From Octopus bimaculoides (lineage: Eukaryota), in NCBI RefSeq assembly GCF_001194135.2, contig NC_068982.1:65629668-65693667 (forward strand): a stretch of DNA of 64,000 nucleotides, given 5' to 3'. Position numbers and translations under genes: made by a program. The notes beneath the pieces were generated by a model. It was not told the origin of the DNA. It ran no database searches and saw only the letters and a program-made list of their open reading frames with translations. Positions 6,009 to 58,500 of the stretch are shown here, piece after piece. The first letter of the stretch is position 1; each line of letters opens with the position of its first letter.

Positions 6009-9000
6009 GTGAGTGACGCGTCTTTTGTGTATATTTGTCTATGATTTAGCACTTCTTCTAACTTGACTCTTCTAAGCTTTTATTATTTCTGATATATTTC
6101 ATATATCAACGAATGTTACTATTGCTTTCTACATAGAACTGTTTTTACTAAAGCAATTTAAAAACATCGCTATAAGAATGCCGTTGCCATCTCACTGATG
6201 ATGGCGACCGTTTGAATGAATTGAATGTCTTAATTCATATATCGCGTCTTTTCTGAAATAATTCCAGTATTTCAATAGATTATAATTATAGTATAATTAT
6301 AATATAATATAACAAAGTATGGTAATTGTTCAGTTTACGTTCGTAAAATCTAAACGTATTGTTGACAATATTGATAACTTTGATTTTAGCTTTAGTCGTT
6401 TTTATTTATTTCTCAGTTCTTGCTTATTTTATATCTTTTCTGAGTCGTACTTTTAGCTGCAAGTCTGTTTTATGAAGGGAAAGAAGAAAGCAGCAAGAAA
6501 TGGTAGCTAGATAACCAGTCAGAAATATAGATTTATGTGTGAGAGATACAGGTAGATAGTTTTAAAAGTCGAGTAAATAATCATTTTCTTCAAAGCGAAG
6601 CTAGAAATCAGTTGTAAATAGCAGAATAAGATGACGAAGGGTAACAAGGGTGAATAAAGTATTAGATAACATACTTTAGTGTATTTAGTTATGTTCCTTC
6701 GCTTTTTTTTACGAACGTAAACTAAACAATTACCCAAAGTATAAACAATTATACTTTGTAGATTTTATTCTGCTCTATCGCAGTTTTGTAATGAAATTTT
6801 TCCTGAACTAGGAGCAAGGCCAGATTTTATTGGTGATGAATCAGATTTATTGACTAAACTGTTGATTATTATTTATTGCATATAATAGAAGGAAAAGTGA
6901 AATTAATTGCAGCCAAAATTGAACTATGAGCACGGAAGCATGTAATCAGGTATAATTAAAGCATATTGTGTGAGGTTTTACTCTCTCGACCATCAATATT
7001 CTCCTTTCGAGGGTCTAGCTGGCGGACAACGTGTTACCTGTGGAAATATTTAGAATATTTTCACACACACACACACACACACACACACCATCACTACCAC
7101 CTTCATCAACCTCATCCATCGAAATAGTAACATGCATTCTACACTCTACAGCAGATTAAATTTGTTAGATACACAAAATATAACTTTGACAACCAACACA
7201 AAATATAACTTTGACAACCAATCGAGGAAATTCTCTACGTGGTCTTTCTGTGTGCTAAAAATAACAGCCAAACCATACCCCATATTCTTAAAAATAGTCG
7301 GACACATTCGATAATGCAGTACTAGATACACATGTTTAAATACAAAAGACAGAATAGTTACGGCTGGAATGTTTTTAGTTATTGGTTTATTTAATCAGGG
7401 ATTGTTGATCTAATGTTAAACGTCCACAATATAGCCTTGAAATTGTGCATGAGTATGCACCCATTCACACATACAAGTTGGTGGGTATGTATGTATGTAT
7501 GCATGCATGCATGCATGAAACAAAAAGGTGTGTTATTATATTATTCTTGAATGCTTTCTGTATAATTTCATGATCAGCCCCCATCTCAAACCTGGATAAA
7601 CTATACCTGTTTGAGAACGCCAGCATATCTATTGTGTTGTGAAGATTGGGTCAGTGGAATAGTATTCAATGGTAATTTTATATGTAGTTGTATTAATTTT
7701 AAAGTGTTAAGGTGTGATTTGAGGAAGATTTGGCTGCTGTTCCTTGTAAGTTGAGCTACTACAAAGAAGCCCACTTGTTGGCTTGTATTTTTGTTTTATT
7801 GTATTGATTAGCTTTTTGAGTGAAACTAGTGAGAATGAAGCATAACTCATTTAATCTGTGTGAATCTGATGTATCATTTGTATTCTGATATAATTAAACA
7901 TCTAAACACCTTCCAAAACAGCAAAGAATTTTGGTTGGTCCATTGGCAGAGTATTCTATGAGATCTCTTCAAACACAGTCTGATTTAGCTTTCCAAACTT
8001 TGCTACAAACACCACCTAAAATCCAAACAAATTAAATCAACCAAATGGATGAAACATATCCAGACACTATGTTTACATATAACAAATTGTGCAGCCTAGA
8101 CCTAGACGAGGCTGAGGTATGGTGTACTCAATGAAATGGACTTGTGGATTTCTTCCTGATCAACCGTTGTCATGCTACAAGATCCATTAGAAGAAGACTG
8201 AGAATACTCAATCACAATAACTTGTGCTAATAATTATGGACAGAAAATTCTGGAAATAATTGAAACTAATCATATTCAATTTTCCCAGTTTTGAGTTGTG
8301 GTTTGACTTTCTCAAGGGAGTAGCAAACTCTTCTTCAAATACACTTCCGACAATTTCAAAATAGTGATGTATTTTTAAGTCCTAAATCATAGGTTAATAT
8401 ATCCTCAAAAATTTGGAAAACCACAACCAATAATTTGATCAAGCACTGAAATAAATTCAGTCAGAGCCAACTTGCTGAACATCTTATATCAACATATCCA
8501 GAGTGCAAGCGCAATGAGTTACTTATTGGATTACCTGCCTCCATGCCATAGGTCTTTTGAAGCTGATAGTTCTTATGTAATACAACTACTATAGGTTATA
8601 AAGTGAAACCATTCCATTAGCTTTTTTTACTAATTCAGTTCTCTTTTCATTATGCTAATCTACTGTGTTCAAATAACAATGGAAATTTACTATTACACAC
8701 TACAGTCAAGAATGACCTGCCAATGACAACACATTTCTCTGATCTCTTTAATTATTTTCTTTCTTTTATTTTCCCAAAATATCATAGGGTCATTAAACAA
8801 ATTATGTATGTTAATTCAATAATTTTCTTTTTGTTTTCATTCATTGACATCACTTTACATACTTGCAATGCAAATATTTATCTCATTTTGCAAATGTTTA
8901 TCTCCTTTTGCAAATGTTTATCTCATTTCAAATTAATTATTATTTTGATATTGTATTTGCCAGGGTTTATTAGCATTACTTCGTAAACTGAAATCTCAGC

Positions 9001-22808: not shown

Positions 22809-23260
22809 TTGGCACAAGGCCACACATTTTGATGGCATGTATGATCAATTATATTGACTCCAGTACTTGACTGGTGCTTTATTGTATCAGCCCCAAAATG
22901 ATGAAAGGCATGTTGACTTCAACAGGATTTGAATTCTGAACACAAAGGGCTGTAACTAAATACCAACAGGCATTTTGCTCAGCCTCTAATGAATCTGTGA
23001 GCAAATCCACTACCCTTATTAAGTATATTGGTTTTAAATTTTGACACAAGGCTAGTCATTTTGGGGGAGGGGGTAAGTCAATTACATCGACCCCAGTGCT
23101 CAATTGGTACTTTATTTTATCAACCTTGAAAGGATGAAAGGCAAAGTCGACCTCGGCGGAATTTGAACTCAGAATGTAATGATGGATGAAATGCTGGTAA
23201 GCATTTTGCCCGGCATGTTAACGATTCTGCCAACTCACTGCTTTCTTCTTAAGCATAATA
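22809..23260 (+). mobile_element. Two head-to-tail copies of a SINE-like repeat downstream of the IDH3B stop
   Basis: GGCACAAGG...CCAGTGCTCAA(C/T)TGGTAC...AAAGGATGAAAGGCAAAGTCGACC...ATTTGAACTCAG family, found many times in the window. Confidence 0.75.
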
Positions 23261-36600: not shown

Positions 36601-38350
36601 GCTTTGGAAGGGGTAGAGGAGGAGGGTTTCAATAATCAGTTACAGTTTAACATGTGTAAGTTAAACTCAAGAAGTAAACAATAACATCTGACAAACCAAT
36701 GAAAGAATTTAAATGTGGTTTCTAAATCTGTTAGAAATAGCAATCAAACTCCCCTCAATTTACACACTTCTGTCTTAAAAAAAGAGGACATACTTCGTAA
36801 TATATGATTGAAAAAAGAATGGGATAGCCATAGCCTTTCATCACAGCTCTGCTCAATCATGGCTGGCATGGGATTAAACAATAATAATAATAATAATGAA
36901 AAAAGATAATACATTTACATCAAAATTTTATGCTAGTATGTCAATTCACTACAACTTGTACTAATACATAAGTCACACCTCTTACAGCTAATTAATCAAA
37001 CGTACTAACAACATGACTAAAATTGCATCTAAAAAAGTAGGTTTTGTGGTCAAGACCAGAAAACAATTCAACCTTGATGTACTGAAGAATTTCAACAAAT
37101 CTCATACATGAACCACATTACAATACAGCTTGATATAATGATTGGCTTGTTGGTGACTAAACTCATCCCTTTATTCTCTTTACTGGTCAAAAAAAAGGAT
37201 GTGACCATCCAGCATAGTTAAAAGTAAATGTGTCAAAGGGCAGATGAGCTTTTCCCTCGATCTCTTTCCTTTTTCCACACTTGCCCTATCTGTCACTGGC
37301 ATTTTTTTTCATTGTCCTCTTATCTTCTGTAGGATTCTTAAAGTAGATATCTAACATTAATTACTACAAATATACTTGTCTTCCACTGTCCCCTAAATAT
37401 CATTAAATTGTAATAACTACTGCACACTTGCAGTCACTTTCCATTTATTGGCTTATAGTGATACTTTAACAATTCTTTCTATTATGAGCAAAAGGCCTGA
37501 AATTTTGGAGAAGTGGGCTAGTTGATTACATCAACCCCCAGTGCTCATCATCATCATTTACCCTCCATCTTCCATGTTGGCATGGGTTGACTGGTACCTA
37601 TTTTATTGACCCCAAAAGGATGAAAGGCAGAATCAATCTCAGTGAAATATGCAACCGGCAGAAATAGCACAAACAATTCTGCTAGCTTGCCTGTAGTAGC
37701 AGCAGCAGTAACAACAATAACAATAGTTTCAAATTTTAGCACAAGGCCAGCAATTATGGGAGACGGGGTGGATAGACGATTAAACTGACCCTGGTGCTCA
37801 ACTAGTACTTATTTTATTGACTCCAAAAGGATGAAAGGCAAAATCAACCTTGGTGAAATTTGAACTCAGTAGTAGTAGAACGTAGTAGTAGTAGTAATAA
37901 CTTCAAATTTTTGGCACAAGGCCAGCAAGTTCAGGGGAAGGAGTAAGTCAATTACATCAATCACAGTGTTCAACTGGTACTTATTTTATTGACTTCAAAA
38001 GGATGAAAGGCAAAGTCAACTTCCATGGATTTGAACTCAAAATGTAGTAGTGGTGGACTCTTCCATTGAAGACAGCTGATTGTTCAGCTTTTGTCAAATG
38101 ACCTGCACAAATGATTAGTTTATGGTGATCAAATGAATGCACTGTACAATTAGCTCACTCCCTCCATCAGATCAACATTGCCTGAACAGGTGCATGGTGT
38201 ACCACATATCAGGTGTTGAAGTGATCGCAGAGCAATGTGAGATGAAGTGCTTTGCTCAAGAACACAACACACCACCTGGTCTAGGAACTGAAACTACGAT
38301 CTAGCAATTGTGAATGCAATGCCCTAACCACTAAGCCATGCATCTTCACA

Positions 38351-38391
<41 letters not shown>

Positions 38392-41239
38392 ATAATAATA
38401 ATAATCATGAAGTTTAACATCAGGAGAGGCATATTCCAGGGAAATAGTCTGTCACCATTGCTGTTTGTGATTTGCATGAAACCCCTCACACAGATATTAC
38501 AGAAAGTCACACCTTGAAAAATGGCAGAAACTTAAATCAATTGCTATATATGGATGACTTAAAGATATTCTGTAAGAGTGAATATGAAGTAAATGGTCTT
38601 GTTTCAACACTGCAAACATTCAGTAAGGATGGAATTTGGATAAAAATGTGTGGTATGTTTACCATAAAAAGAGGCAAAGTAGTGACATCTGATGATGTAG
38701 ATCTACCCAACAGTGAGAGAATCAAGGATATTGAGATGAATAGATGTAAGTATCTGGGTATTTTGGAGTATGACAAAATCAAGGAAAGTGAGATGAAGGA
38801 AAGCCTTAGGCAAGAATATCTCAGAAGAACCAAATTAATCATGGAGAGTAGGTTCAATGGAAAGAACAAGATCAGAGCAATGAATACATGGGCTGTTTCC
38901 TTAATGCAAAACGGTGCAGGTATTAGACAGACAAAAAATGAGCTTGAGGAATTGGATAGAAAAACCAGGTAAGTGATGACAATGAACAAGGAACTGCACC
39001 CTAAAAGAGATATCAGTAGACTATGTGTCTAAGTACAAGGGAGGAAGAGGCCTCATAGGACGCAAGATCTGTATTGTCAAATAAGGAAAACATTCCAGGA
39101 TGGTACGTCAAACAGCAGACTGAACCCTTGCTTGCCTCTGTTAGAAACAACATGTTACCTACTAAAATTGTGGCACCCAAAAACATTTAAGAAACAAGAC
39201 AGAGAACAAAAATTAAACAACTGGAAAATGAAAGCAATGTATGGGCAATACCTCAGAGAAATCGAAGGAAAGACAAGGTTAATACCTGGGGATCACTAAG
39301 GAGAAATGATCTGAAAGGATGCACTGAGACATTGGTATGCAGTGCCCATGAACAAGCTCAGAACTAATTACACCAAGTTCCAAATAAATAAGAACAATGA
39401 ATTTCCCCTTTGTAGGATATGTGGCAGCAAAAACAAAATAATCTGTGAGTGTAGTAAATTGGCCCAAAAGGAATACAAAAGGAGGTATGATAAAATAGTT
39501 AAGTTTGTTCACTGAAGATTGTGTGAGAAGTATGGTCTTGAAAGAACACAGAAATAATACAAACATAAACTAGAAGGTGCCACTGAGAATAATGAATATA
39601 AAATCTTATGGGATTTCACAATTCAGTGTGACTCACTAATTGATGCTCAGAGACCAGACAATATTGTAGTGGATAAAAGGAAGAAAGAAGCTAAGATCAT
39701 AGATCTTACCATACCTGGGGACACATGCATGGGAGACAAAGTGCTGCAAAAGATGGAAAAATACAAGTTACTAAAAAACAAAATTGCAAGAATGTGGGCA
39801 ATGAAGAGATTAACTGTCATCCCAGAAGTTGTAGGGGGAATGGGAGCACAAATAACAGAGTTTGAGAAATATATCGGAGAAATTAGAATTGACATGAGGG
39901 TGGACCCTGCCAAAAAACTACTCTTCTGGGGACAGTGAGGATTTTGAGATTGATACTTGAATGTTAAGTATTGTGGAAAGAGACCCTGTGAGACTTTTGA
40001 CGATAGGTTGCTGTTCACTCTCACAGAATTAACCAAAGCAAGTAAAATCAAGAGCTTTGAATAATAAAATGGAATAATAATAAACATGCACATGAGGTGG
40101 TATTGAAAATTTCCTGGACTAGTTATGTTTACTAATGAAATAACTTATTTACCTAAGTTTTAACATCATCACCTTTGATATAGTCCCCCTGCACAGCAAT
40201 ACACAGGTAATTTACTGCCACTTTTGGAGTCCAGTCTGGAAGTTGTTTCCTGTAAGTGAATCAAGGATCTTCCATGATTCACTCTTGATCTTGACAACAG
40301 TGTTAAAATGGCAACCTTTGAGCTGCATTTTCATCTTGGGGAACAGAGAGAAGTCTGCAGGCGCTAAATCTGGCTGATAGGGTGGTTGTGGAAGCAATAT
40401 GATATTGTTTTTGGTGAGAAACCCATGAGTAAAGAGAGCTTGGTGAAGAATCGAATTCTTTGTGCTCCACAGATTTGGTCACTTCCAATGAATGTTTCCC
40501 CTCAAACACTTCGAAATGTTACAGTAACACTCTCAATTGATAGTCTAGCCCTGGGGGATGAATTCTCAATGCACAATACTGCAGATGTCAAAAAACTGAT
40601 GAGCATGCTTTTGATTGAGCTGCAGCTTTGTTATGCCTTTTGAAGTGCCCATGCCACTCGAAACACTGCATACAACCCATTGCCTCGTCGCCGTAAACTT
40701 GCTGAAGCATGCTCAATGTCACTGTAGCAAAATTTCATGTTGGCTCTTTGTTCCAACTTCCTGTCCATGACAAAAATTGCAGACTACAGCATACACATGA
40801 TCACAAAAAAACCCCCCATAAATTCCACAACCTGTGAGATAAACACAGCAATATCACTCAGTGCACTGCTTCATGAAGGTCACAGCAAGCTCTCACTGCA
40901 CATGCAACCATGTGCAGCCATTTATTGGTATGCTACGGAACTAGCCTGGGAACTTTTTGATACCACCTCATATCGAAACATTTTGAAAGATCACCAACAG
41001 GAATTTACTGATCTTGTTGATAATATTTGTTCTTAATATATACCTAATGAAAATTTCCTCAAAGTCCACAGGTACACCAGCAGCTGTAAAGATATCTTGT
41101 ACACTGGTCATTAGACTGGCACCAACACCGTCTCCAGGTACCATGGTAACAACATGTTTTTTCATAGATTTGGCAACAGGCTCATTTACCTGAAAGGAAA
41201 CAAAACAGTCATTTAATTAATATATTATTTAACTTTTAG

Positions 41240-41278
<39 letters not shown>

Positions 41279-43102
41279 AACAGCTCATGGTATTCAGCTA
41301 TGTTCCTAGCTATGTTCTAAGTTCAGCTCCCATCCAGATCAACTTTGCATTTCTTTCTCTTGGGGGCCAATAAAATAAGTAACAGTTAAGTATCAGGATC
41401 AGTTTAATTAACTGTATCCTTCCACCACAATCTGCAGCTGTGTAAGAAAGTTAGTGTCAACGGTATTATTATCTTGCCATGGTTTTGTCTTTCATCCTTT
41501 CAGGATCAATAAAATAAGTACCAGTCAAGTACTGGGGTTGATGTAATTGACTTGTTCCTCCTCTCAAAATCAGAAAGACTTATTATTTCATGTCATCTTT
41601 GCTGCTTATTACCTCCCTAATCAGGCTCGTCACCAGACTTTGGCGCCTGAAGGTGCTTCAGAATATTCTAGGTGAGAACTAATTTGTATTGTGGGAAGAC
41701 TTTTGTAAACTGTATTTTCTAGATCTGGGGGTGCACTATTTCTGATAGGATATTACAACATCATTTAACATCCACTTTTCCATGTTTGCAAAAGCCAGAG
41801 GGAATTCACTGAAACAGATTTTCTATGGTTAGATGTCCTTTCATGTTCCTGTCTCTCACTTGTTTTTAAGCAACGTGATATTTCCCCATGACTTGGCATG
41901 TTTTCATAGAAGATTAGGGATGTTGGACACCACTTGCATGATGATGACATTTGTTTCCAAATGTCATATGATGTCAAGACAAAGAGACACAAACACACAC
42001 ACATGACAGGATTCCTTCAGTTTCCCCTCTACCAAATCCACTCACAAAGCTTTGGTTGGCCTGAAGCTATAAAAAAGCCTTGTGAGTGATGCATCTACTG
42101 TAAACAGGTAAATAAATATTGTAAATACAGTAATCCCTCGTCCACTGCGGGTGTTACATTCCAAAACCTCCCAGAGAAATAAAATCTAAAAAAATATAAA
42201 TACCTATCAGCCACAGAAACCTGCGATATACATTAGCCAGAAAAATCTACAATGTACTGAGTGCATGATAGGTGAACCACAATGTACTGAGTGTGTGATA
42301 GGTGAACCATGATATGGCAAGTGATTAATGTAGTAGGTATAGTAAATGAAATAAGAAATGATTTTAAATACTTACAGACAGTTGCAACAACCCTTGACTG
42401 GTTTGAACACCACGTTTCAAGCATTTGTAATTACTCTGAAATATAGAGGGAATAAATATATATATATGAATAAAATATACATAAAAGAATAAATAAGAAA
42501 TGAAAATCTAACATTTCAAATTGAAAATTATTTGAATTTGTGAATGGAAATGCGTTGAACTAGAATATTAATACATATTGTATAAAATTTGAATCATAGA
42601 AAAGAGGTTTTGTCTATTCATTCATTTGTTTCTTTAATATCTGTTTTTTTATGTTAGCATGAGTTGGACAAAGCAGGATTTTACAGCTGGTGGCTCTTCC
42701 TGCCACTAATCCCTACTTGTTTTTCAAGTAAGAGATTTCTTATTATTTCATATGTTTTTAAAAGTATAAAACATTGGCCATTATTTCAACAACAAATCAT
42801 AATCATTGTCATCGTTCAATGTCCATGTTCTACACTGGCATGGGTTGGGTGGTTTGACAGGATCTAATGGATCCAAGGACTGCATCATGTTCCAGTAACT
42901 GTTTTGACATGGTTTCTTTGGCTGGATGCCCTTCCTAATGCCAACCACTTTACTGCATGTACTGGGTGCTTTTTTCATGTCACTGGCATAATGAGGTCAC
43001 CAAGCAGCATGCAAGACTATGAGACCTGAGAAGGAGACAGTGGCTTTATCACCACTTCACTCATGTTTTTGTCAAACAAGGCCATGGAATATCCATCTTC
43101 AT

Positions 43103-43154
<52 letters not shown>

Positions 43155-45585
43155 TTTGAATATATACATGTAAGCTTAAACATAAAAGCATATCAAATTT
43201 ACCTATTTCTCTGTAGATTGAAAAAAATTATGAACAGCTTTAATTTTCAACCCTCATTGGGGTCTCATCAGAGGTGTTTACTTCACAAGAAAAGATAGAT
43301 GCAATGTAACGATCTATTAAAATAGAAATTTCCTGCAGAGGATGTATCTCTACAAGATATAATCTCCAGGTGGAAATTTATAAAAGTGATTATGTAGAAG
43401 GTCCCTTATTAGTGAAGATAAGTCAGTTACTAGTTGTTAAAGTTGTTTAACCTCCAGATAAGTTCTGATCCAGTAGACTTGATCAAAGCTTGAAATTTAT
43501 GGGGAATGGGTAAGTCGATCATATTAACCCAGTGCACAATAAGTGAACCTCGGTGTACTGAGTCGTGATAGGTGAATTGCGATATGGCAAGGGATTACTG
43601 TAGTACGTATAGTAAATTAAATAAGAAATCATTTTGAATACTTACAGACAGTTGCAACAAACCTTGACTGGTTTGAACACCAGGTTTCAAGCATTTGCAA
43701 TTACTCTGGTACTTAATTTATTGACCTCATAAAGATGAAAGGCAAAGTCAACTTTGGCTGAATTTGAACTCAGAATGTAGCAAGGAGTGAAATACTGCTA
43801 AGCATTTCACCAGGCGAAAATAAGCATCCCATATTTTATTTTATATATCTTATTTTTGCAGTATTACAGCAATAATGAGCTTATCGAATACATTGCTCAA
43901 GTACACTACAACTCATCAGAAAAGGGGAAAAGGTGATGAAAAGTAGCAATAAGTAAAGGAAAATAGCAATGATAGCAAACTGCATTGTATACAGTACTTT
44001 GTTTTTAATGACATGGTATATATATATATCCTTATATTCACACGCTATATATATATATATCCTTATATTCACACGCTATATATATATATATATATATATA
44101 GATATATATATATACCATGTGAATATAAGGATTTACTTTTCATAAGAAAAAAAAGCCAAGGCTGTGTATAATATAGAACATTTATAAATATTTATACGAC
44201 CTGAGTTGGACCCCCTATTCGCATAATAACCGAACCTAGAGCTTAACTTTGGTCTAATACATAGCACTTACTCAGCATTACCTGAAACCTCTGGGTCTAA
44301 TTGACACCACTATCGCTCATAACCTATATATATATATATATATATCAGGAAGAGAGCCACTCCATCAGATCGTGAAGAAGTTATAGAGAATATTTTATGC
44401 TGAGCTTTTGGATTTTGTCGAGTTTCCTTAATTTCATATCATGTGCCATTTTTCCATGAGCCTCTTTCATTTGACTGAGATATTTAAAATTTTTGTTGCA
44501 TTTCTGATCTTTCTGATATCTAAATACAGATACTTATGTGCATGAATTACTTTTGTTTTGTTTTGTTTTTTGTTTTTTTTCAAATTTAATTCTGAAGAAT
44601 TGAAGAAGTAAATTTACCCTATCGTGTCTTACTCATTTTGCCCCAGCTAATTAAGTCTTTTTTTCTACTCAAAGAGATCGGAGATAATTTCTTGAATTAG
44701 TGTTCTGAATATGTTATAGTGCTTTTAATGCATTCAGAGAAGGTCATTTGCTCAGTTGATATAGTTTTTGTAAGGTAGCGAACATTTGTAAAAAAATATT
44801 TTTGGGTCAAAATCAAAAATGCAGTAAATATTACTCATTGTGCTCCACCCCCTATTTAGACTAGCATAGGGGGAAGAGATAATCATGTTTGAAACGCTTT
44901 TAAAAGATGAAATGATCACAATCGGGATGTTTTTAAAAGACGAAAGAGTCACGGTTGGAAACCTTTAGAAACACGCATGTTTTCAGGCGTCCGTATATTT
45001 CTGTGCATTAGTGCGCACACGAACGGATGCGCAAAGGAATCAACCAAGTTATTTTCAATTTGGGAAATATTCTATTTCGGAGTCTCGACTATGTGATACA
45101 CTATATAAAATATTGACAGTTCAGTAATATGACATTGAAGAGAGAGACATAAATTCAAGACAGATGAATTAATCATACGTATATTCATTCACAGCTGACC
45201 TAGTGTTAAATAACAAATACATTTCCACGGCGGTTGATAGTAAAATATAGTTTCTAATTCCATAGAACTGTACAGCCTTTCGATTAGCAAATTTCATTTC
45301 TTAATGAAATGTCATTCTGACTCGGCATATGACAATTTAATTTGAAGGTTGCGAGAGAAAGAAAATGCGAAAGTCCAACGTATAGGTTGGGAGTAAAGGT
45401 TAATAGATTTGGTGAAGATTACAGCGATTTAACATAAGCCAATATTATCCACAGTATGATATGAACTAAGATAAGATAAACCAAAGAGGGAAAAAAACAG
45501 AAGAATTGTTTAATATACTTACAGAGTAACGTTGAGCTCCTTTAATAAGACCAGACCGAAAGGACGAGATGACAAGGGACGCCAT
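23460..45585 (-). CDS. IDH3B: NAD-dependent isocitrate dehydrogenase subunit beta, mitochondrial: complement(join(23460..23537,24277..24432,27048..27194,28721..28823,32011..32144,34261..34393,34789..34929,41044..41189,42376..42435,45523..45585)), 386 aa
   Basis: The spliced ORF has an Arg/Ser-rich presequence, [85 protein letters not shown] and [19 protein letters not shown] and the C-terminus are beta-type. Splice phases are consistent throughout. Confidence 0.95.
24277..24432 (-). CDS. IDH3B: IDH3B exon 9
   Basis: tag|[21 protein letters not shown]...KVIEEGK|gtcagt. Confidence 0.96.
24587..25142. repeat. (TA)n plus a long compound TA/CA microsatellite
   Basis: Pure TA run at 24587-24648 and a cryptic (TA)n(CA)n array at ~24825-25142. 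These produce the spurious ORFs in the track. Confidence 0.95.
25417..25575. repeat. 52-bp minisatellite, 3 copies
   Basis: ACATTTAAATTGTACCC(A/G)GGTGTCATGTTTTT...TAGTTAAATTCAAAA starts at 25417, 25469 and 25521. Confidence 0.9.
27048..27194 (-). CDS. IDH3B: IDH3B exon 8
   Basis: cag|[37 protein letters not shown]...AVFEP|gtaagt. Confidence 0.97.
27386..27769 (+). mobile_element. Full-length tRNA-derived SINE (~385 bp) with a 13-bp TSD
   Basis: A-box TGGCCCAGTGG, B-box GGTTTCGATTCC and a CAACAAC tail. ATAGGGTTGAATT occurs at 27373-27385 and 27770-27782. Confidence 0.9.
28721..28823 (-). CDS. IDH3B: IDH3B exon 7
   Basis: cag|(M)[34 protein letters not shown]|gtaagt. Confidence 0.97.
29810..30200 (+). 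mobile_element. RTE-clade LINE C-terminal remnant
   Basis: [33 protein letters not shown]...CDKC, as in the RTE RLPK..LYGEL..G.R..GRP..RFKD motif. Confidence 0.7.
30494..30713 (+). mobile_element. SINE nested in an older repeat, with an 11-bp TSD
   Basis: AAGATTAGGAT at 30483-30493 and 30714-30724. The host repeat resumes on both sides. Confidence 0.8.
31320..31960 (-). mobile_element. Degenerate RTE-like LINE fragment
   Basis: Minus-strand [19 protein letters not shown] resembles the RTE C-terminal KRPRGRPRxRWxD motif. Confidence 0.6.
32011..32144 (-). CDS. IDH3B: IDH3B exon 6
   Basis: tag|[44 protein letters not shown](M)|gtaagt. Confidence 0.97.
32680..33187 (+). mobile_element. IS630-Tc1-mariner transposase remnant
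   Basis: [36 protein letters not shown]...DSAPCYT...PPNSPxxNxLDYCV...SRLEAVIE, with frameshifts. Confidence 0.8.
33190..33571 (+). mobile_element. RTE LINE 3'UTR with an internal ~93-bp repeat
   Basis: GAGCGAGATC(G/A)TTGCCAGTGCCGATGGACTGGCTCCTGTGCAGGTG repeated. Ends GGACGTTAAACGACGAT like other RTE tails here. A short N gap follows at 33572-33581. Confidence 0.75.
34261..34393 (-). CDS. IDH3B: IDH3B exon 5
   Basis: cag|(R)[22 protein letters not shown]...[15 protein letters not shown]|gtaaag. Confidence 0.96.
34789..34929 (-). CDS. IDH3B: IDH3B exon 4
   Basis: cag|(S)[31 protein letters not shown]...SLNMKL(R)|gttggt. Confidence 0.93.
35294..35338. repeat. Perfect 21-bp inverted repeat with a 3-nt spacer
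   Basis: CAATTAACAAAAGCATGGTAC-ATG-GTACCATGCTTTTGTTAATTG. Confidence 0.95.
37488..38050 (+). mobile_element. Three head-to-tail copies of the GGCACAAGGCC-type SINE
   Basis: The AAAAGGATGAAAGGCA core recurs at ~37615, ~37826 and ~37997, separated by simple repeats. Confidence 0.8.
38351..38405. repeat. (TAG)13(TAA)n microsatellite
   Basis: Read directly from the sequence. Confidence 0.95.
38406..40085 (+). mobile_element. 5'-truncated R4/Dong-like non-LTR retrotransposon (RT + CCHC + restriction-like endonuclease), degenerate
   Basis: [32 protein letters not shown], a CxxC region and [22 protein letters not shown] (PD..D endonuclease). Ends in an AATAATAATAA tail. Confidence 0.8.
40093..40970 (-). 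mobile_element. Degenerate mariner element with TIRs
   Basis: TIRs TGAGGTGGTATTGAAAATTTCC and GGAACTTTTTGATACCACCTCA. Minus-strand [22 protein letters not shown] matches the mariner HPPYSPDLAPSDF motif. Confidence 0.85.
41044..41189 (-). CDS. IDH3B: IDH3B exon 3
   Basis: cag|[48 protein letters not shown](S)|gtatat. Confidence 0.95.
42128..42330. mobile_element. Tigger-like (TcMar) MITE
   Basis: TA-CAGTAATCCCTCG ... CAAGTGATTAATG-TA. The duplicated copy at 43589-43600 reads CAAGGGATTACTG-TA. Confidence 0.7.
42376..42435 (-). CDS. IDH3B: IDH3B exon 2 (presequence, native copy)
   Basis: ctctatatttcag|[20 protein letters not shown]|gtaagt. 60 nt, phase 0-0, bringing the protein to 386 aa. Confidence 0.88.
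43646..43705 (-). CDS. IDH3B: Duplicate of IDH3B exon 2 (possible alternative exon or pseudo-exon)
   Basis: aattaagtaccag|[20 protein letters not shown]|gtaagt. 57/60 nt identical to 42376-42435. The frame is open and the donor intact; the acceptor is weak and SINE-derived. Confidence 0.4.
45523..45585 (-). CDS. IDH3B: IDH3B exon 1
   Basis: acaaacATGG start context; [21 protein letters not shown]|gtaagt. Basic and hydroxylated, with no acidic residues, as expected for a mitochondrial presequence. Confidence 0.88.
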
Positions 45586-49378: not shown

Positions 49379-52293
49379 AATCTTACACATCTAGGAGAGC
49401 ATACTTGCTTAATTTCTTTTTAATCCTTGCTACTCTGCATTTTATGTCCATATTATGTGCAAGTGTGTGTTGAATTTACACATAAAAGAGATATCAGAGG
49501 ATCAGTCTTCTCTTATATATCATGTAGGTCTTTTTAACACTATTTTTAACATATTGTTATTTAGATCTTGGTATGCTTCTGAGATCAGTATTCTGTTTGA
49601 GTCCATGCGACATTATAAAACTTGTTAACAACACACTGACAGAGATGTTTCCACTGTCGAAAACTCTGTCAAATGATGGAATACACTCAGATACACACTT
49701 ACAGCCACCAATTGGCATTCGTATCTGCTGCTTGTTTGCTCAAGAATTTCGTTACCATTATTTTTTCCTGTAACACTTTTTACCTTTTATTACTTTTCTA
49801 TTACAAGCATTATGATCTATAATAAACTTTATCATATTTTACATTCCAAACTGAACCTTATAATTCATTTGCTGAATTTTATTTCATTCAGTTTTTGAAT
49901 TTCTGTTAGTTTTTTGTACATGATCACATTTTTGCTATTTGCACATTGCTTCAAACCTTTTTTAAATACAATTCTTGATCTGCTATGTATATTTTATTTC
50001 AGCATGCGCTATATTTCTTTTTGTGAAACAAAGTTTAATGTCTAAGTACTGATGTTTCTGCAAGCAATCTCACTAGTGCTGGTGTCATGAAAAAATACAC
50101 CAGCACATATTGTCAAGTTGGTGGTGTTAGGAAGGGCATCCAGCCATAGAAGATATGCCAAAGCTGACACTGAATCTTGGCACAGCCGTGTGATTCACCA
50201 GATCCTGCCAAACTGTCCAAGCCATACCAGCATGAAAAAAAAAAATGGATGATAGATGGTGATGATGTTAAAATAACATCAAATGTGACCATTTATTAGA
50301 ACTATTTTGAAAGAAATAGGTTACCATTTTGTAAATACATTGGAGTTCTCTTTCAAGTGGAATATAAAAGCACCACAAACAAAAATATATTTTAACTACA
50401 TATATACTGAAATCAGTTTTTGTATGAATTTTGCAAGTATTCATTATTGTCATCATTTAATATCCGTTGTCCATGCTGGCATGGGTTGGATGGTTTGACC
50501 AGGGCTGGTAAGCTGAGGAGCCGCACCAGATTCTAGTCTGATTTGGCATGGCTTCTACGGCTGGATGCTCTTCCTAATGCCAACCACTCCAGGAGTGTAC
50601 TAGGTGCTTTTACATGTCACTGGCACAGGTGTCAGTTTGCATGACACCAATATCTGCCACAACTATGATTTCACTTGGTTTGATGGGTCTTCTTTTCAAG
50701 CATGTCATTTGTCATTTCCTCTGCGAGGCCCAACATACAGAAGGTGCTTTTTATGTGCCACCGGCATGGGTGATAGTTATGTGACACCAGCATCAGCCAC
50801 ACTGCCTCCACGATATGGCAGATGCTGGTGTCACGTAAAAGTACCTTCTGTATGTTGGGCCTTATAGAGGCAATGAAGCCCAGTGTATAAGTATTATAGT
50901 TCTTTATTTCAAACACGAAATTACAGCTGTAGATTTTATCATTTATGAATCAGCACTATCATTAGTTTAACAAGAACATTACAATCTCACTGAAATAATT
51001 AATAAACACATTGAAAAAAAAAAAAAAAATAAATAAACAGAATAAAAATGTATAAAACATATACAAAATATGGACCAAAAGTAGTAGAAATCATATAACT
51101 TTTGGAACTATAAGTGGTGTTGAAATAATAACAAAAATGTATATAAAATTACTTTCAAAATAATATTTAATTGATAAGAAGGCAGTGAGCTGGCAGAAAC
51201 ATTAGCACACCGGGTGAAATGCTTAGCGGTATTTTGTCTGTCTTTACATTCTGAGTGCAATTTCTGCCGAGGTTGACATTGCCTTTCATCCTTTCGGGGT
51301 CGATAAATTAAGTACCAGTTGTGTACTAGGGGCAATCTAATCAACTCCCCCTGCTCCACTCACAAAAAATTTCAGGCCTTGTACCAAGAGTAGAAAAGAA
51401 TATTTAATTGATAAGGAATTTATACAGCAGGTAATTCTTTTTTTGTTTTAGAAATAATACTGAAGAGTTATCCCAGGCAAGAGTAACAGAATTGATAGAG
51501 TGCCAAACTAATAATAACCTTGTAGTATTTACTTATGATCCTGTATGTTTTGAGTTCAAAATTCTACACCTGCTTCCCTTAAAATTATCTCCTGATGCCT
51601 ATGTTAGATATTACTACTACTACAACCACCACTTAGCTGGCAGATTCATTAAAGTGTTGGAAGCATTCCTTCCAGCTCTTTATGTTCTGAATTCCCATTC
51701 TGCTTAGGTCATCCTTGATTTTCATCCTATGTATATATATTATATTTATATATAAAACCTAAGACAAGATGAAGTTTAGCTGAACACAAAAAAATGTTCA
51801 TCATATATTTATATTTATATATATACAGAAGTTAAAAAGTTTGCAAAAATTTTTTGTTACATTTAATCAGTTAAGTAGTTAACTTACAAAATAATTTGCC
51901 AACAATGTATCTTTCCATTATTAAGATTTGTTTATATTTGCATATACATATATATTCTTTTCTGCTCTAGGCACAAGGCTCGAAATTTTGAGGGAGGGGG
52001 GCCAGTTGATTAGATTGACACTAGTATGCAACTGGTACTTAATTTATCAACCCCGAAAGGATGAAAGGTAAAGTTGACCTTGGCGGAATTTGAACTCAGA
52101 ACGTAAAGACAGATGAAATACCACTAAGCATTTTGCCCAGTGTGCTAAAATTTCTGCCAGCTCACCGCCTTATATACATGTACATTTATACACACATGTG
52201 TGTGTACACACACATACATTCATTATGTAAGGCACACATACATGTTTATTTGTATAATACACGGTTAGCTTAAGGAATGTAATTCAATCTTCT

Positions 52294-55500: not shown

Positions 55501-58500
55501 AAAATATAAAGGAACCTAAAATTTAAAGAGTTAAATATCTTACGATCGTTTCGCGGATATTACTATAATCACAAAGTGATCTAAAGATCATCTTATTAAC
55601 AGTAATTCCGCTCTTCAGAGATGCATTAAGAACCAATAGTATATATATATAATATTAAAACATTAGAAATATTTTTAATTTTTAATATTAGAATGTATTT
55701 ATCGCCAAATCAGATTGGAGACTGGTGTAGCCATCTGGTTCACCAGTCCTCAGTCAAATCATCCAACCCATGCTAGCATGGAAAGCAGATGTTAAACGAT
55801 GATGATGATGATGAGTATATACATTCATATAAAAAACTTGTTCCCATGTAGTTCCAATTTATCCATTTCATATAAAATCTGATTTATTTCATGTAGAACT
55901 TAATATATAAATATTTCATGCAGAATCAAATATTTTTTTTAAGCTAATTACATTAATTTTACCTACCTGACAGTTTCAGCAAGTTCAGCAATCAATTTAT
56001 CAACTGTCAGTAAATCTTGAAGCCTTAAGTTGCGTCTGTAACCCCAAGAATATCGGTCGATTGTCATGGCATTTTCCCACTTCTTCTTTACAAGAACACC
56101 TGCAAAGAAATGTAGAACAAAATGATAATCCAAAAAGATACAAAGCTGATGTAGAACATAATGATAATCCAAAAAGATACAAAGCTAATTGTTGCCCTTG
56201 AATAAACTCATATCAAACCTGATCAAATAGCCCTATGATCAAGGGCTTTCCTTCCAAGACCATCCTTTCTTTTATCATTCTAAGGAAACATTGTCAAATG
56301 TAAAATTAGAAATATAATATTTCTAAATCTCTCAGAGAGATTTAAGCAGTAGTGTATTCCCTTATTGGGATTGTCACATTAAGTTGACAATATACTACAA
56401 CTTTAATTGTCAAATGTGTCTCTTTTCCAAAATGGAAGGTGTAATTTGAGGAAAATTTGACTGTTATTTATAGCAGGTCGTGCAACCATTTAAAGATCCT
56501 CTTTTTGGCTCAGGGGTTTCTAAAGCCAGTTTGTTTTCACCTTTTAGAATACTCTAAAGTTAACCTATTGTACACTATTTGGAGAGCTAGATGATGGCCA
56601 CCTAAGACATTTGATACTTTTCATGTATATTTTTAAAACTAGGACATTAAAAAAATATAAAAACATAAAATAAATTGGTTCAATGGTAGAACATCTGTCA
56701 TGTTTATAGATGTAGGTTTGAGTCCCACTGGCACCTTTTGACTTTTTCTATCCAAAAGTTTTTTTAACCCAATACCTATATGCTATTATTTATAACTTTA
56801 TCTATTTTGAGTTCTACTATTATGAACGAATTATCTCAGGTCTCTAGGAGTTTCTAAATTCACGTGATGCAAACAACATACAATTCTTGCTAGTAAAAAC
56901 GAATTTTCTAAAATAGACAGAGAAATCTAAAGGATTGCTTTGGTCTAATGGTAGAACGTCCATCAAATTTACAGATTCAAGTCCTACAAGCAACCTTTGA
57001 CTTCTATCAAAAGGGTTTCTTTCCACCTGATATTTGCACACTATTATTCATAACTTTATCTACTTTGAGTTCCCCCATAAAAAAAATAAAATGAAACTGT
57101 GTCATCTTTATCTGAGTTCTAACTAGAGATAAAGGAAAAGCTATAAGTCGAAATTAACAGATGTTATTGTAAGGGATGTTGTACAACAGAATGCAGAGAT
57201 ACAATCTTTGGTGATGCAACAGTACCAACAGTAATAAGGATTTCTAACAGGCACAAGCATGGTTGTGTCATAAGAAGTTTGTTTCCTAATCACCTGGTTC
57301 TGGGTTCAGTCCCATTGTATGGCACCTGGGGTGTTTTCTACTTTAAGCCTTGGGCTAACCAAAGCACTGTGAGTGGATTTGGTAGACAGAAACTGAAAGA
57401 AGCCCATTGTTTGTAACTGGTGTCGATATGTTTTCATCTCTATAACTTGGTGATTCAGCAAAAGAGACTGACATACTAAGTACTAAGCTTAAAAAAACAA
57501 TAAGTCCTGAGGTTAATTCGTTCAACTAAAAATTTTTCAAGGCAGTGCACTAGCATGGCTGCAGCCAAATGGTTGAAACAAAAGATATGCATAAGACCAC
57601 AAATTTGGGGAGCAGATTTATTTGATTAAACTGACTCCAGTACTTGAATGGTACTTTATTTTCTCACCCACCACCTCCACAGAAAGTTAAATGTTGAGCT
57701 TCATAGAATTTGAACTAAGCATGTAAGGAGCTGATATGTTGTTCAATTCTGCCAATCTAATCAATTCTCACATAAAGACAAGGCCACAAATTTTGGAGGA
57801 AGAGGAGGTGTGAAGCGGATTTCATTGACTTCATTACTTAATTACTGGAATGAGATGATGATTTGGCATGGTTGACTGCTTAGGTTGATGGTATGTTTTG
57901 GCACTCGAGGCAAACATGCACATGTGTGCAGAAATATACAAATACAGATAGAAAAAGTGAGTGTATGTGTGTGTGCATGAGAGAGAGACAGAGACAGACA
58001 GAGAGAAAGAGAGAGAGAAACATTACAATTTACTAATTGAACCTGATTGACATGAACCCTTTCTCTCTCATACACATAGACATGCCCAGAGAGAGAGGAA
58101 GAGAGACAGAGAGGAAGAGAGACAGAGAGGAGGGGAAGAGAACAAGAGAAACATTAAAACTTGATGTCAAATACATTAGCATTGAATCAGCAACATCAAA
58201 TAGGCTATGCCAAAACGGCTGTGCCAAATTGTTGTATACCCTTACCTGGATTGTATCTGTCATTACAGTTGAGAAATCCACCATGTTTGCATCGAACATT
58301 TTTACCCCATCGGTCATTCACACATACTGTGTCTTTCACAGGACTAAAAAGTAAGTGAATGAATAAATAAATATATAAATAAAAGGAAAAACACACAAGT
58401 ATTCTTATTAACTTAATCGACTGTCAAGTGATAATACATTTTCAAAACTTCTGATTTTGATGTCTTATTAAAAATCCATTTTGGCCATCTTACTCCACTC

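What the first reader, a model, noticed from the sequence alone, without database searches (positions are those of the whole stretch)
43540..43708. In-frame second copy of IDH3B exon 2 inserted into the middle of a SINE
Seen: 43540-43705 copies 42269-42435 (exon 2 plus ~105 bp of its downstream intron), about 1.27 kb away. It splits a SINE exactly between CCCAGTGCACAA (ends 43539) and CTGGTACTTAATTT (starts 43706). That CTG is also the microhomology that restores a CAG acceptor on the coding strand. The copy keeps a GTAAGT donor, phase 0-0 and an open frame. It differs at 3 of 60 nt: Y>C, R>P and one silent change. Known: this exon lies in the mitochondrial presequence, where Arg residues drive import and MPP cleavage. 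Inference: if spliced in, alone or alongside the native exon, it would give IDH3B isoforms with altered import or processing, i.e. a new exon born by templated insertion into a SINE. The acceptor is weak, with AGs upstream and little adjacent pyrimidine tract, so it may be a silent pseudo-exon.
Basis: partly seen in the sequence, partly recalled or inferred. Interest (0 to 1): 0.75.

Follow-up and report, generated by a model that had tools for sequence, protein, structure and literature searches.

The report
Duplicated IDH3B exon inside a SINE
A 166-base copy of exon 2 of the octopus mitochondrial enzyme gene IDH3B was pasted into a SINE repeat in the preceding intron, and a sister species' annotation already uses that copy as an alternative exon, so this is a tidy but probably low-impact example of how a new exon is born.

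Summary
Window 43540-43705 copies 42269-42435 (148/166 identical): exon 2 of Octopus bimaculoides IDH3B plus about 106 nt of intron 2. The copy sits precisely inside a sense-oriented SINE in intron 1, with no SINE base lost or duplicated. There is microhomology at both junctions.

- The same copy in the same SINE is present in O. sinensis and O. vulgaris but absent from Argonauta. It is therefore an old, fixed insertion, about twice the age of the O. bimaculoides/O. sinensis split, and not an assembly artefact.
- The two O. sinensis RefSeq isoforms, X1 and X2 (both 386 aa), differ only in exon 2. X2's peptide is encoded only by the copy, so the copy is annotated there as a substitute for the native exon.

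In O. bimaculoides the copy has the weakest acceptor in the gene. It also carries R29P, which removes the Arg of a conserved R-10-type presequence processing motif. No purifying selection on the copy is detectable, so its use in this species is untested and may be low.

This is a young duplicated alternative exon whose acceptor comes from a SINE. It is a neat case, not a new kind of system. Interest is moderate, and functional impact is probably small because exon 2 is mostly cleaved presequence.

The parts
43646..43705 (-). Copy of IDH3B exon 2 (exon 2'): 60 nt, phase 0-0, encoding [20 protein letters not shown]
   Evidence: The orthologous exon in O. sinensis (L001 6708-6767) encodes [20 protein letters not shown], which equals residues 22-41 of isoform X2, XP_036370364.1.
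43540..43645 (-). Copied first ~106 nt of intron 2, including the GTAAGT donor; it ends about 10 nt into a second 30-nt repeat unit (GGTTCACTTA)
   Evidence: 14 mismatches over 97 aligned columns against the native intron segment, plus one gap column.
43706..43815 (-). 5' part of the host SINE (sense to the gene). It supplies the pyrimidine run TTTGCCTTTCATCTTT and the CAG acceptor of the copy exon
   Evidence: alignment to six other SINE copies; acceptor context.
43484..43539 (-). 3' part of the host SINE (TTGTGCACTGGGTTAATATGATCGACTTACCC...), directly continuing the 5' part once the insert is removed
   Evidence: the empty-site join is contiguous, with no target-site duplication and no loss.
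42376..42435 (-). Native IDH3B exon 2 ([20 protein letters not shown]), the template of the copy. It carries the R-10-type motif R29-G|VQTSQGLL|Q39
   Evidence: A single orthologous 60-nt exon exists in Argonauta (L003 4037-4096).
42269..42375 (-). Native intron-2 segment that served as template. It overlaps a 30-nt tandem repeat (42249-42278 / 42279-42308) that O. sinensis/vulgaris lack
   Evidence: (family D6).
45523..45585 (-). IDH3B exon 1 (ATG at 45585; [21 protein letters not shown]), whose donor would feed either exon 2 version
41044..41189 (-). IDH3B exon 3, the acceptor used after either exon 2 version
42126..42150 (-). Candidate docking site in intron 2, complementary to the intron just downstream of the copy exon (43585-43604). 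Status inconclusive
   Evidence: z about -4; -30.1 kcal/mol in O. bimaculoides, -17.6 in O. sinensis, rank 60/609 there; P 0.006 Watson-Crick only, 0.086 with G-U.

Best explanation
What it is: a young, duplicated alternative version of IDH3B exon 2.

Origin (inferred from the anatomy). In an ancestor of O. bimaculoides and O. vulgaris/sinensis, after the split from Argonauta, a double-strand break opened inside a tRNA-type SINE already sitting in sense orientation in intron 1. The broken end ...AAGTACCAG annealed by its CAG to the CAG acceptor of exon 2, about 1.27 kb downstream. It primed synthesis of about 166 nt through exon 2 and into intron 2. The new end then re-annealed to the other SINE end at T..TGCACT. 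This is microhomology-mediated, synthesis-dependent repair. The SINE was interrupted without losing a base.

Consequence (shown at sequence level). The copy lacks the native acceptor region. It borrows the SINE's CAG and the SINE's upstream pyrimidine run, and it brought its own GTAAGT donor.

Use. In O. sinensis the copy is annotated as replacing the native exon (isoform X2 versus X1). That gives a presequence differing at two residues, plus one residue just after the predicted mature N-terminus. In O. bimaculoides (this window) the same exon has a poorer acceptor and has lost the Arg of the R-10 processing motif. It is most likely included rarely if at all, and it is evolving without detectable constraint.
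For: Identity of the gene: a 10-exon, 386-aa model, 100% identical to XP_014769553.1; PF00180; best solved match human IDH3 beta at 1.3e-138, against gamma at 2e-108.

Direction and precision of the insertion: the flanks join into an intact SINE matching six other copies. The native exon has a normal pyrimidine-rich acceptor, and it is the only copy in Argonauta.

Microhomology: CAG at the 5' junction; T plus TGCACT (7 of 9) at the 3' junction.

Age: the copy is in the same SINE in O. sinensis and O. vulgaris. Nine alignment sites split native from copy, and none split by species. Paralogue divergence of the intron part is 14-16%, against 5-9% between orthologues.

Use: X1 and X2 of O. sinensis are both 386 aa and differ only at residues 24, 26 and 40. 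X2's residues are encoded only by the copy exon at L001 6708-6767.

Weak acceptor: pyrimidines at -23..-4 are 7/20 in O. bimaculoides and 10/20 in O. sinensis/vulgaris, against 12-18/20 for the nine constitutive acceptors. Competing AGs lie at -6 and at -20 or -16.

No constraint: 2 changes in 60 nt between species, and 31% of intronic 60-nt windows do as well. All three changes in the copy exon are non-synonymous.

R-10 motif: the definition is in PMC7996597. It is present at a fixed distance from the PGDG anchor in 11 of 23 lophotrochozoan IDH3B sequences, including all the octopods, and it is abolished by R29P in the hypothetical O. bimaculoides copy isoform.
Against: I could not see any transcript data. 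X2 is a computational RefSeq model. That such alternative models rest on RNA-seq is my knowledge of the NCBI pipeline, not something checked here.

The O. vulgaris and O. bimaculoides annotations in the collection list only the native form.

A weak new cassette exon upstream of a strong exon would by default give a transcript with both exons, yet X2 lacks the native exon. No conserved mechanism for that exclusivity was found.

Templated insertions by polymerase theta are usually 3-30 bp taken from the immediate flanks (PMC7165422). A 166-bp insert from 1.27 kb away is atypical for that specific pathway, so the enzyme is not identified.

The start of the copy exactly at the exon boundary rests on only 3 nt of microhomology.
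Confidence: 0.72

Rival explanations
1. Pure pseudo-exon. The copy is a neutral relic of DNA repair that is never, or only at noise level, spliced in any species. O. sinensis X2 would then reflect a few aberrant reads or a model-building artefact.
For: It has the weakest acceptor in the gene, with competing upstream AGs. Purifying selection is not detectable, and all three substitutions in the copy exon are non-synonymous. R29P in O. bimaculoides removes the conserved motif Arg. O. vulgaris and O. bimaculoides records list only the native form.
Against: The reading frame, CAG acceptor and GTAAGT donor are intact in all three species after roughly twice the species-split time. X2 exists as a RefSeq model. 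It cannot come from projecting a related protein, since the native exon matches the O. bimaculoides protein better than the copy does: 1 mismatch against 2. With only 60 nt, the test for constraint has little power.
Confidence: 0.25
2. Regulated, functional mutually exclusive exon pair. The two exon 2 versions are chosen by competing RNA pairing between the duplicated intron arm and one docking site in intron 2. They tune mitochondrial import or processing of IDH3B in a tissue-specific way.
For: X2 replaces the native exon instead of adding to it. The duplicated unit carries one arm (TACAGTAATC..) complementary to a site about 170 nt downstream of the native arm. That is the geometry proposed by Ivanov and Pervouchine (PMC6071210). 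In O. bimaculoides the copy arm forms a 19-bp helix of -30.1 kcal/mol, which is the top-ranked window in the scan of the two introns (about 430 windows; z -4). Exon 2 carries the processing motif.
Against: In O. sinensis, the species with the annotated isoform, the site is unremarkable (rank 60/609 for the copy arm and 13/609 for the native arm, about -17 kcal/mol). Only a 10-bp core is shared, which is what chance gives. The O. sinensis isoforms differ by a near-swap of residues (Y24C, C26Y) and keep the Arg, so little functional difference is expected. No selection signal was found.
Confidence: 0.1
3. RNA-mediated origin. The chimera arose when the reverse transcriptase copying the SINE RNA switched to IDH3B pre-mRNA and back during retrotransposition, or when a cDNA fragment of the pre-mRNA was captured.
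For: The insert is in sense orientation relative to the SINE and contains unspliced exon-intron sequence. Its 5' end coincides with the exon boundary. Short microhomologies are typical of template switching.
Against: The polymerase would have had to return to the very next nucleotide of the SINE, because the joined flanks show no loss or gain. The template lies 1.27 kb away in the same intron-exon neighbourhood, as expected for local DNA repair. No RNA with a 5' end at the start of exon 2 is expected from splicing chemistry (inference).
Confidence: 0.05
4. Assembly artefact or collapsed/expanded haplotype.
For: The window contains N runs, so the assembly is scaffolded.
Against: No N run lies within 7 kb of the locus. 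The copies are 11% diverged and have different flanks. The same structure is present in the O. sinensis and O. vulgaris chromosome-level assemblies.
Confidence: 0.01

Closest known systems
Mutually exclusive / substitution exons born by tandem exon duplication (Kondrashov & Koonin, Letunic et al.; surveys PMC9013439, PMC9741552, PMC5740500)
   Same: Two homologous exons of identical length and phase sit next to each other in one gene. Annotated isoforms (O. sinensis X1/X2) carry one or the other and are otherwise identical.
   Different: This is not a contiguous tandem duplication of exon plus both flanking introns. Only the exon and its downstream intron were copied, 1.27 kb upstream, into a SINE that supplies the acceptor. 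The pair is very young (genus level), whereas most human events are reported as ancient (abstract of PMC9741552). The affected region is a cleaved presequence, not a structural domain.
Exonization of SINEs (for example Alu exonization in primates; my own knowledge)
   Same: A SINE inside an intron contributes the splice signals that turn intronic DNA into an exon. Here the signals are the CAG and the pyrimidine run of the SINE body.
   Different: The coding sequence and the donor are not SINE-derived. They are a copy of a genuine exon. The SINE is in sense orientation, while classical Alu exons mostly come from antisense Alus.
Templated insertions at repaired double-strand breaks (polymerase-theta end joining, synthesis-dependent MMEJ, MMBIR/FoSTeS; PMC7165422)
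   Same: The insert is identical in origin to nearby sequence on the same strand. There are short microhomologies at both junctions, no target-site duplication and no poly(A).
   Different: At 166 bp, with a template 1.27 kb away, it exceeds the usual 3-30 bp from immediate flanks. It fits the longer synthesis-dependent or replication-based variants better. The enzyme cannot be inferred.
Competing RNA structures generated by duplicating one arm of an intronic stem (Ivanov & Pervouchine 2018, PMC6071210)
   Same: The duplicated unit includes an intronic segment complementary to a single downstream site. That gives two potential selectors and one docking site.
   Different: The pairing is strong only in O. 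bimaculoides. It is at chance level in O. sinensis and O. vulgaris, so it is not established as functional.

Membership tests
IDH3 beta subunit gene (NAD-dependent isocitrate dehydrogenase, mitochondrial) | Iso_dh domain, and closer to beta than to the gamma or alpha subunits | tested here: met
   PF00180 over residues 55-378, E 6.5e-69. Human IDH3 beta 1.3e-138, against gamma 2.1e-108 and alpha 8.7e-84. 100% identical to XP_014769553.1 of O. bimaculoides.
Duplicated mutually exclusive (substitution) exons | Two neighbouring homologous exons of the same length and phase | tested here: met
   Both are 60 nt, phase 0-0, 57/60 identical, 1270 nt apart.
Duplicated mutually exclusive (substitution) exons | Transcripts contain one and only one of the two exons | tested here: inconclusive
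   O. sinensis RefSeq models X1 and X2 each carry one version, and no model carries both. No transcript data could be examined, and there is nothing for O. bimaculoides.
Duplicated mutually exclusive (substitution) exons | Origin by contiguous tandem duplication of the exon with its flanking introns | tested here: not met
   The copy starts exactly at the exon's first base and lacks the native acceptor region. It lies inside a SINE 1.27 kb upstream, with unrelated sequence between the two copies.
Duplicated mutually exclusive (substitution) exons | A mechanism enforcing exclusivity (competing RNA pairing, steric hindrance, or a frame shift with NMD) | tested here: inconclusive
   Double inclusion or double skipping stays in frame, since each exon is 60 nt. 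The intervening intron is 1210 nt, so there is no steric block. The candidate docking site is not conserved.
SINE exonization | Splice signal(s) of the new exon derive from the SINE | tested here: met
   The CAG acceptor and the upstream TTTGCCTTTCATCTTT run match the SINE consensus seen in six other copies.
SINE exonization | Exon body derives from the SINE | tested here: not met
   The exon body and donor are a copy of IDH3B exon 2 and intron 2.
Microhomology-mediated templated insertion | Insert copied from nearby DNA, microhomology at both junctions, no target-site duplication and no poly(A) | tested here: met
   The template is 1.27 kb away on the same strand. There is CAG at the 5' junction and T+TGCACT (7/9) at the 3' junction. 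The joined SINE flanks are contiguous.
Microhomology-mediated templated insertion | Size and template distance typical of polymerase-theta scars (3-30 bp from flanking DNA) | tested here: not met
   The insert is 166 bp from 1.27 kb away, against the 3-30 bp stated in PMC7165422.
R-10 type mitochondrial presequence (MPP then MIP/Oct1) | Arg at -10, hydrophobic residue at -8, Ser/Thr/Gly at -5 relative to the mature N-terminus | tested here: met
   The native exon has R29, V31, S34 and predicted mature Q39. V is non-canonical, but Argonauta has the strict RNFQTSQGIL. The same register is found in 7 of 19 non-octopod orthologues. The O. bimaculoides copy has P at -10, so it does not meet the motif.
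R-10 type mitochondrial presequence (MPP then MIP/Oct1) | Actual two-step cleavage at those positions | not testable with these tools
   This needs N-terminal proteomics or import assays. PMC7996597 also reports a case where the -10 Arg was dispensable.

The most novel reading that the evidence does not exclude
The locus may be a caught-in-the-act example of how a regulated mutually exclusive exon pair arises. A single repair event copied an exon together with one arm of an intronic stem into a SINE that donated the acceptor. That would instantly create two selectors competing for one docking site (42126-42150). The species now differ in which arm pairs best and in whether the alternative presequence keeps its R-10 processing Arg. 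IDH3B could then be imported or processed differently depending on exon choice.
Probability: 0.1. Interest if true: 0.65.

Novelty: new member of a known kind. Interest (0 to 1): 0.4.

Why it matters
Most duplicated alternative exons studied so far are ancient, so the molecular event that made them can no longer be read. Here both junctions are still legible, and they show three things:
- An exon copy need not bring its own acceptor, because a resident SINE can supply one.
- A non-tandem, repair-type insertion can seed an exon-substitution pair.
- The result can persist for roughly twice a species-split time with intact frame and splice signals.

It also gives a natural three-species contrast for testing what makes a new exon usable: a better acceptor with the Arg kept in O. 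sinensis/vulgaris, against a poorer acceptor with the Arg lost in O. bimaculoides. The physiological consequence is probably small, because exon 2 encodes mostly cleaved presequence.

Tried and rejected
1. Looking for transcript-derived protein fragments that carry the copy exon. Two N-terminal queries against the 5.8-billion-protein collection returned nothing. They failed to return even P0001, which contains the second query verbatim. So this is a recall limit of the word index for partial queries and carries no evidence either way.

2. Looking up the hypothetical O. bimaculoides copy-exon isoform on assembled contigs.

3. Docking/selector RNA pairing. A strong helix was found in O. bimaculoides, but it is not conserved in O. 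sinensis and is only marginal against shuffles. I did not adopt it as an explanation.

4. Purifying selection on the copy exon. It has 2 changes in 60 nt, against an intronic background of about 5.5-6% (well-aligned intron stretches), and 31% of intronic 60-nt windows do as well. No signal, and low power.

5. Gene conversion between the copies. No site supports it.

6. A tRNA-like head in the SINE by ARAGORN: no call. The tRNA origin of octopus SINEs is taken from the literature (Ohshima & Okada 1994, cited in PMC9223172).

7. Rfam and ORF scans of both strands around the finding. Only sub-threshold hits on TA/CA simple repeats, and no meaningful ORF.

8. A mariner-like reading of intron-3 ORFs was not confirmed by Pfam.

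9. Literature on octopus IDH3B isoforms: none found.


Full report
1. THE OBSERVATION

The window carries a 10-exon, 386-aa gene on the minus strand. Its exons are 45585-45523, 42435-42376, 41189-41044, 34929-34789, 34393-34261, 32144-32011, 28823-28721, 27194-27048, 24432-24277 and 23537-23460.

The protein has an Iso_dh domain (PF00180). It matches human IDH3 beta (1.3e-138) better than gamma (2e-108) or alpha (9e-84). It is 100% identical to O. bimaculoides XP_014769553.1.

The repeat is real. 42295-42438 matches 43565-43708 at 91%, and a local alignment extends this to 42260-42438 / 43531-43708.

The copy exon (43705-43646) is 60 nt, phase 0-0 and open. It has a CAG acceptor and the same tct|GTAAGTAT donor as the native exon. 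It reads [20 protein letters not shown], against [20 protein letters not shown] for the native exon.

No N run is near the locus.

2. THE HOST IS A SINE AND THE INSERTION IS PRECISE

Joining the two flanks (..43706 with 43539..) gives a sequence that aligns straight across the junction to six other copies of one SINE family in the window. The consensus is ...GATAAAWTAAGTACCAG|TTGWGCACTGGGGTCGATGTAATCGACTT.... No SINE base is missing or duplicated, and there is no poly(A).

The SINE lies in the same orientation as the gene. Because the flanks of the upstream copy are two halves of one element, while the downstream exon has an ordinary pyrimidine-rich acceptor, the direction of copying is unambiguous: 42xxx was the template and 43xxx is the copy.

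At the 5' junction, the SINE's ...CCAG and the native ...TTTCAG share CAG. At the 3' junction, the native continuation TCATGCACT and the SINE TTGTGCACT share T plus TGCACT, 7 of 9.

The copy runs about 10 nt into a second 30-nt repeat unit (GGTTCACTTA). O. bimaculoides has that second unit in its native intron (42249-42308), but O. sinensis and O. vulgaris lack it. The tandem repeat was therefore probably ancestral and later lost in the O. sinensis/vulgaris line.

3. COMPARATIVE EVIDENCE

The protein collection holds O. sinensis, O. vulgaris and Argonauta hians orthologues. I fetched their loci as L001, L002 and L003.

Both Octopus species carry both exon versions at orthologous places, and the copy sits inside the same SINE. 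Argonauta has one 60-nt exon 2 in a 973-nt intron 1 and no copy.

In a four-sequence comparison, nine sites split native from copy, none split by species, and one is ambiguous. So the duplication predates the O. bimaculoides / O. sinensis split, and there has been no gene conversion.

From branch lengths the duplication is about twice as old as that split. R>P is specific to the O. bimaculoides copy. C>Y is specific to the O. sinensis/vulgaris copy. Y>C is shared by all copies.

4. IS THE COPY USED?

This is the main new result. O. sinensis has two RefSeq isoforms, both 386 aa:
- X1 is XP_036370359.1, identical to the O. vulgaris protein CAI9718228.1.
- X2 is XP_036370364.1.

They differ only at residues 24, 26 and 40, all inside exon 2.

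X1 reads [20 protein letters not shown], which is the native exon (L001 8012-8071). X2 reads [20 protein letters not shown], which is encoded only by the copy exon inside the SINE (L001 6708-6767).

So in a sister species the copy is annotated as replacing the native exon. I could not see the underlying reads. That NCBI builds alternative models from transcript alignments is my own knowledge. A projection artefact is unlikely, because the native exon fits the related O. bimaculoides protein better than the copy does (1 mismatch against 2).

Attempts to find transcript-derived fragments failed for technical reasons. No paper in the library mentions these isoforms.

5. HOW GOOD IS THE EXON IN THIS WINDOW?

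The acceptor is the weakest in the gene. Pyrimidines at -23..-4 are 7/20, against 12-18/20 for the nine constitutive acceptors, and there are AGs at -6 and -20. Using the -6 AG would add TACCAG in frame.

O. sinensis and O. vulgaris have a 5-nt deletion relative to the SINE consensus. It moves the SINE's pyrimidine run closer to the AG and raises the count to 10/20. The O. bimaculoides state is therefore the older and poorer one.

Between species the copy exon shows 2 changes in 60 nt. Well-aligned introns differ by about 5.5-6%, and 31% of intronic 60-nt windows are at least as conserved. All three substitutions in the copy exon are non-synonymous. No constraint is detectable, though the test has little power.

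6. WHAT THE EXON ENCODES

The native exon contains R29-G|VQTSQGLL|Q39. This fits the R-10 motif R-X|(F/L/I)-XX-(S/T/G)-XXXX| defined in PMC7996597, except for V at -8. Argonauta has the strict form, RNFQTSQGIL.

The same motif occurs in the same register, 15-19 residues before the PGDG anchor, in 11 of 23 lophotrochozoan IDH3B sequences. The predicted mature start near residue 39 also agrees with where the human beta-subunit chains begin in solved structures: chain residue 16 aligns with residue 54.

Exon 2 therefore encodes the end of the presequence, the processing octapeptide and only about three residues of mature protein. O. sinensis X2 keeps the motif and differs from X1 by a near-swap (Y24C, C26Y) plus Q40L. 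The O. bimaculoides copy has P at -10.

The effect is untested, and the cited paper reports one case where the -10 Arg was dispensable.

7. MECHANISM

The best reading is that a double-strand break in a resident SINE was repaired by microhomology-primed synthesis on the nearby exon 2 region. That is synthesis-dependent MMEJ or a replication-based template switch. The anatomy fits: a same-strand local template, microhomology at both ends, and no target loss.

It is larger than typical polymerase-theta scars, which are 3-30 bp (PMC7165422). An RNA-mediated route is unlikely, because the polymerase would have had to return to the very next SINE nucleotide.

I found no conserved mechanism for the apparent exclusivity. 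Double inclusion or double skipping would stay in frame, and the 1210-nt intron between the two exons gives no steric block. A 19-bp helix (-30 kcal/mol) between the copy's downstream intron and 42126-42150 is striking in O. bimaculoides (P about 0.006 for the Watson-Crick run). However, it is unremarkable in O. sinensis. It matches the geometry of the Ivanov-Pervouchine model (PMC6071210) but is not established.

8. VERDICT

This is a new member of a known kind, duplicated alternative exons, with an unusual and still-legible origin in which a SINE supplied the acceptor. Interest is moderate. Functional impact is probably small, and use in O. bimaculoides is unproven.

Noticed in passing
window 42249-42308 (minus-strand intron 2): A 30-nt tandem duplication (ACAATGTACTGAGTG[C/T][A/G]TGATAGGTGAACC, two units at 93% identity) is present in the O. 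bimaculoides native intron but absent from O. sinensis and O. vulgaris. The exon copy in all three species extends about 10 nt into a second unit, so the tandem repeat was probably ancestral and later lost in the other lineage.
   Followed up: partly
window 43585-43604 pairing with 42126-42150: There is an O. bimaculoides-specific 19-bp complementarity (-30.1 kcal/mol) between the intron just after the copy exon and a site in intron 2 downstream of the native exon. Pairing there would loop out the native exon. The docking side differs from O. sinensis at 6 of 17 positions, mostly transitions (several at CpG sites).
   Followed up: partly
L001 about 6690-6707 and L002 about 6685-6702, against window 43706-43730: O. 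sinensis and O. vulgaris have a 5-nt deletion (AAATT/TAAAT) relative to the SINE consensus, just upstream of the copy exon's acceptor. It brings the SINE pyrimidine run 5 nt closer to the AG and may have improved the acceptor in the lineage where the isoform is annotated.
   Followed up: partly
window 45522-43831 against L001 3064-~6600: Intron 1 differs by about 1.9 kb of indels between O. bimaculoides (exon 1 to exon 3 span 4542 nt) and O. sinensis (6572 nt). Apparent divergence there (12.9%) is inflated by poor alignment.
   Followed up: no
window 22858-23214, 37590-38047, 41484-41553, 51210-51381, 51974-52133, 57635-57656: There are many further copies of the same SINE family in both orientations. 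Each sense copy carries the same latent acceptor-like motif (TTTGCCTTTCATCCTTT...AAGTACCAG), so the family may be generally prone to exonization.
   Followed up: no
window 40172-40850 (intron 3, minus strand): Open frames with a transposase-like look (for example ...[21 protein letters not shown]...) suggested a mariner/Tc1 remnant. Pfam gave no hit at E<=0.01, so this is unconfirmed.
   Followed up: partly
L001 27979-28188, L002 28110-28321, L003 14253-15437: An Arf-family small GTPase gene lies tail-to-tail just downstream of IDH3B in all three other species, so synteny is conserved from Argonauta to Octopus. I did not check the corresponding part of the window.
   Followed up: no
tool behaviour: the search for homologous proteins returned nothing for N-terminal partial queries of 137-157 aa, even though P0001 contains one of them verbatim. 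Negative results from partial queries with this tool should not be read as absence.
   Followed up: yes
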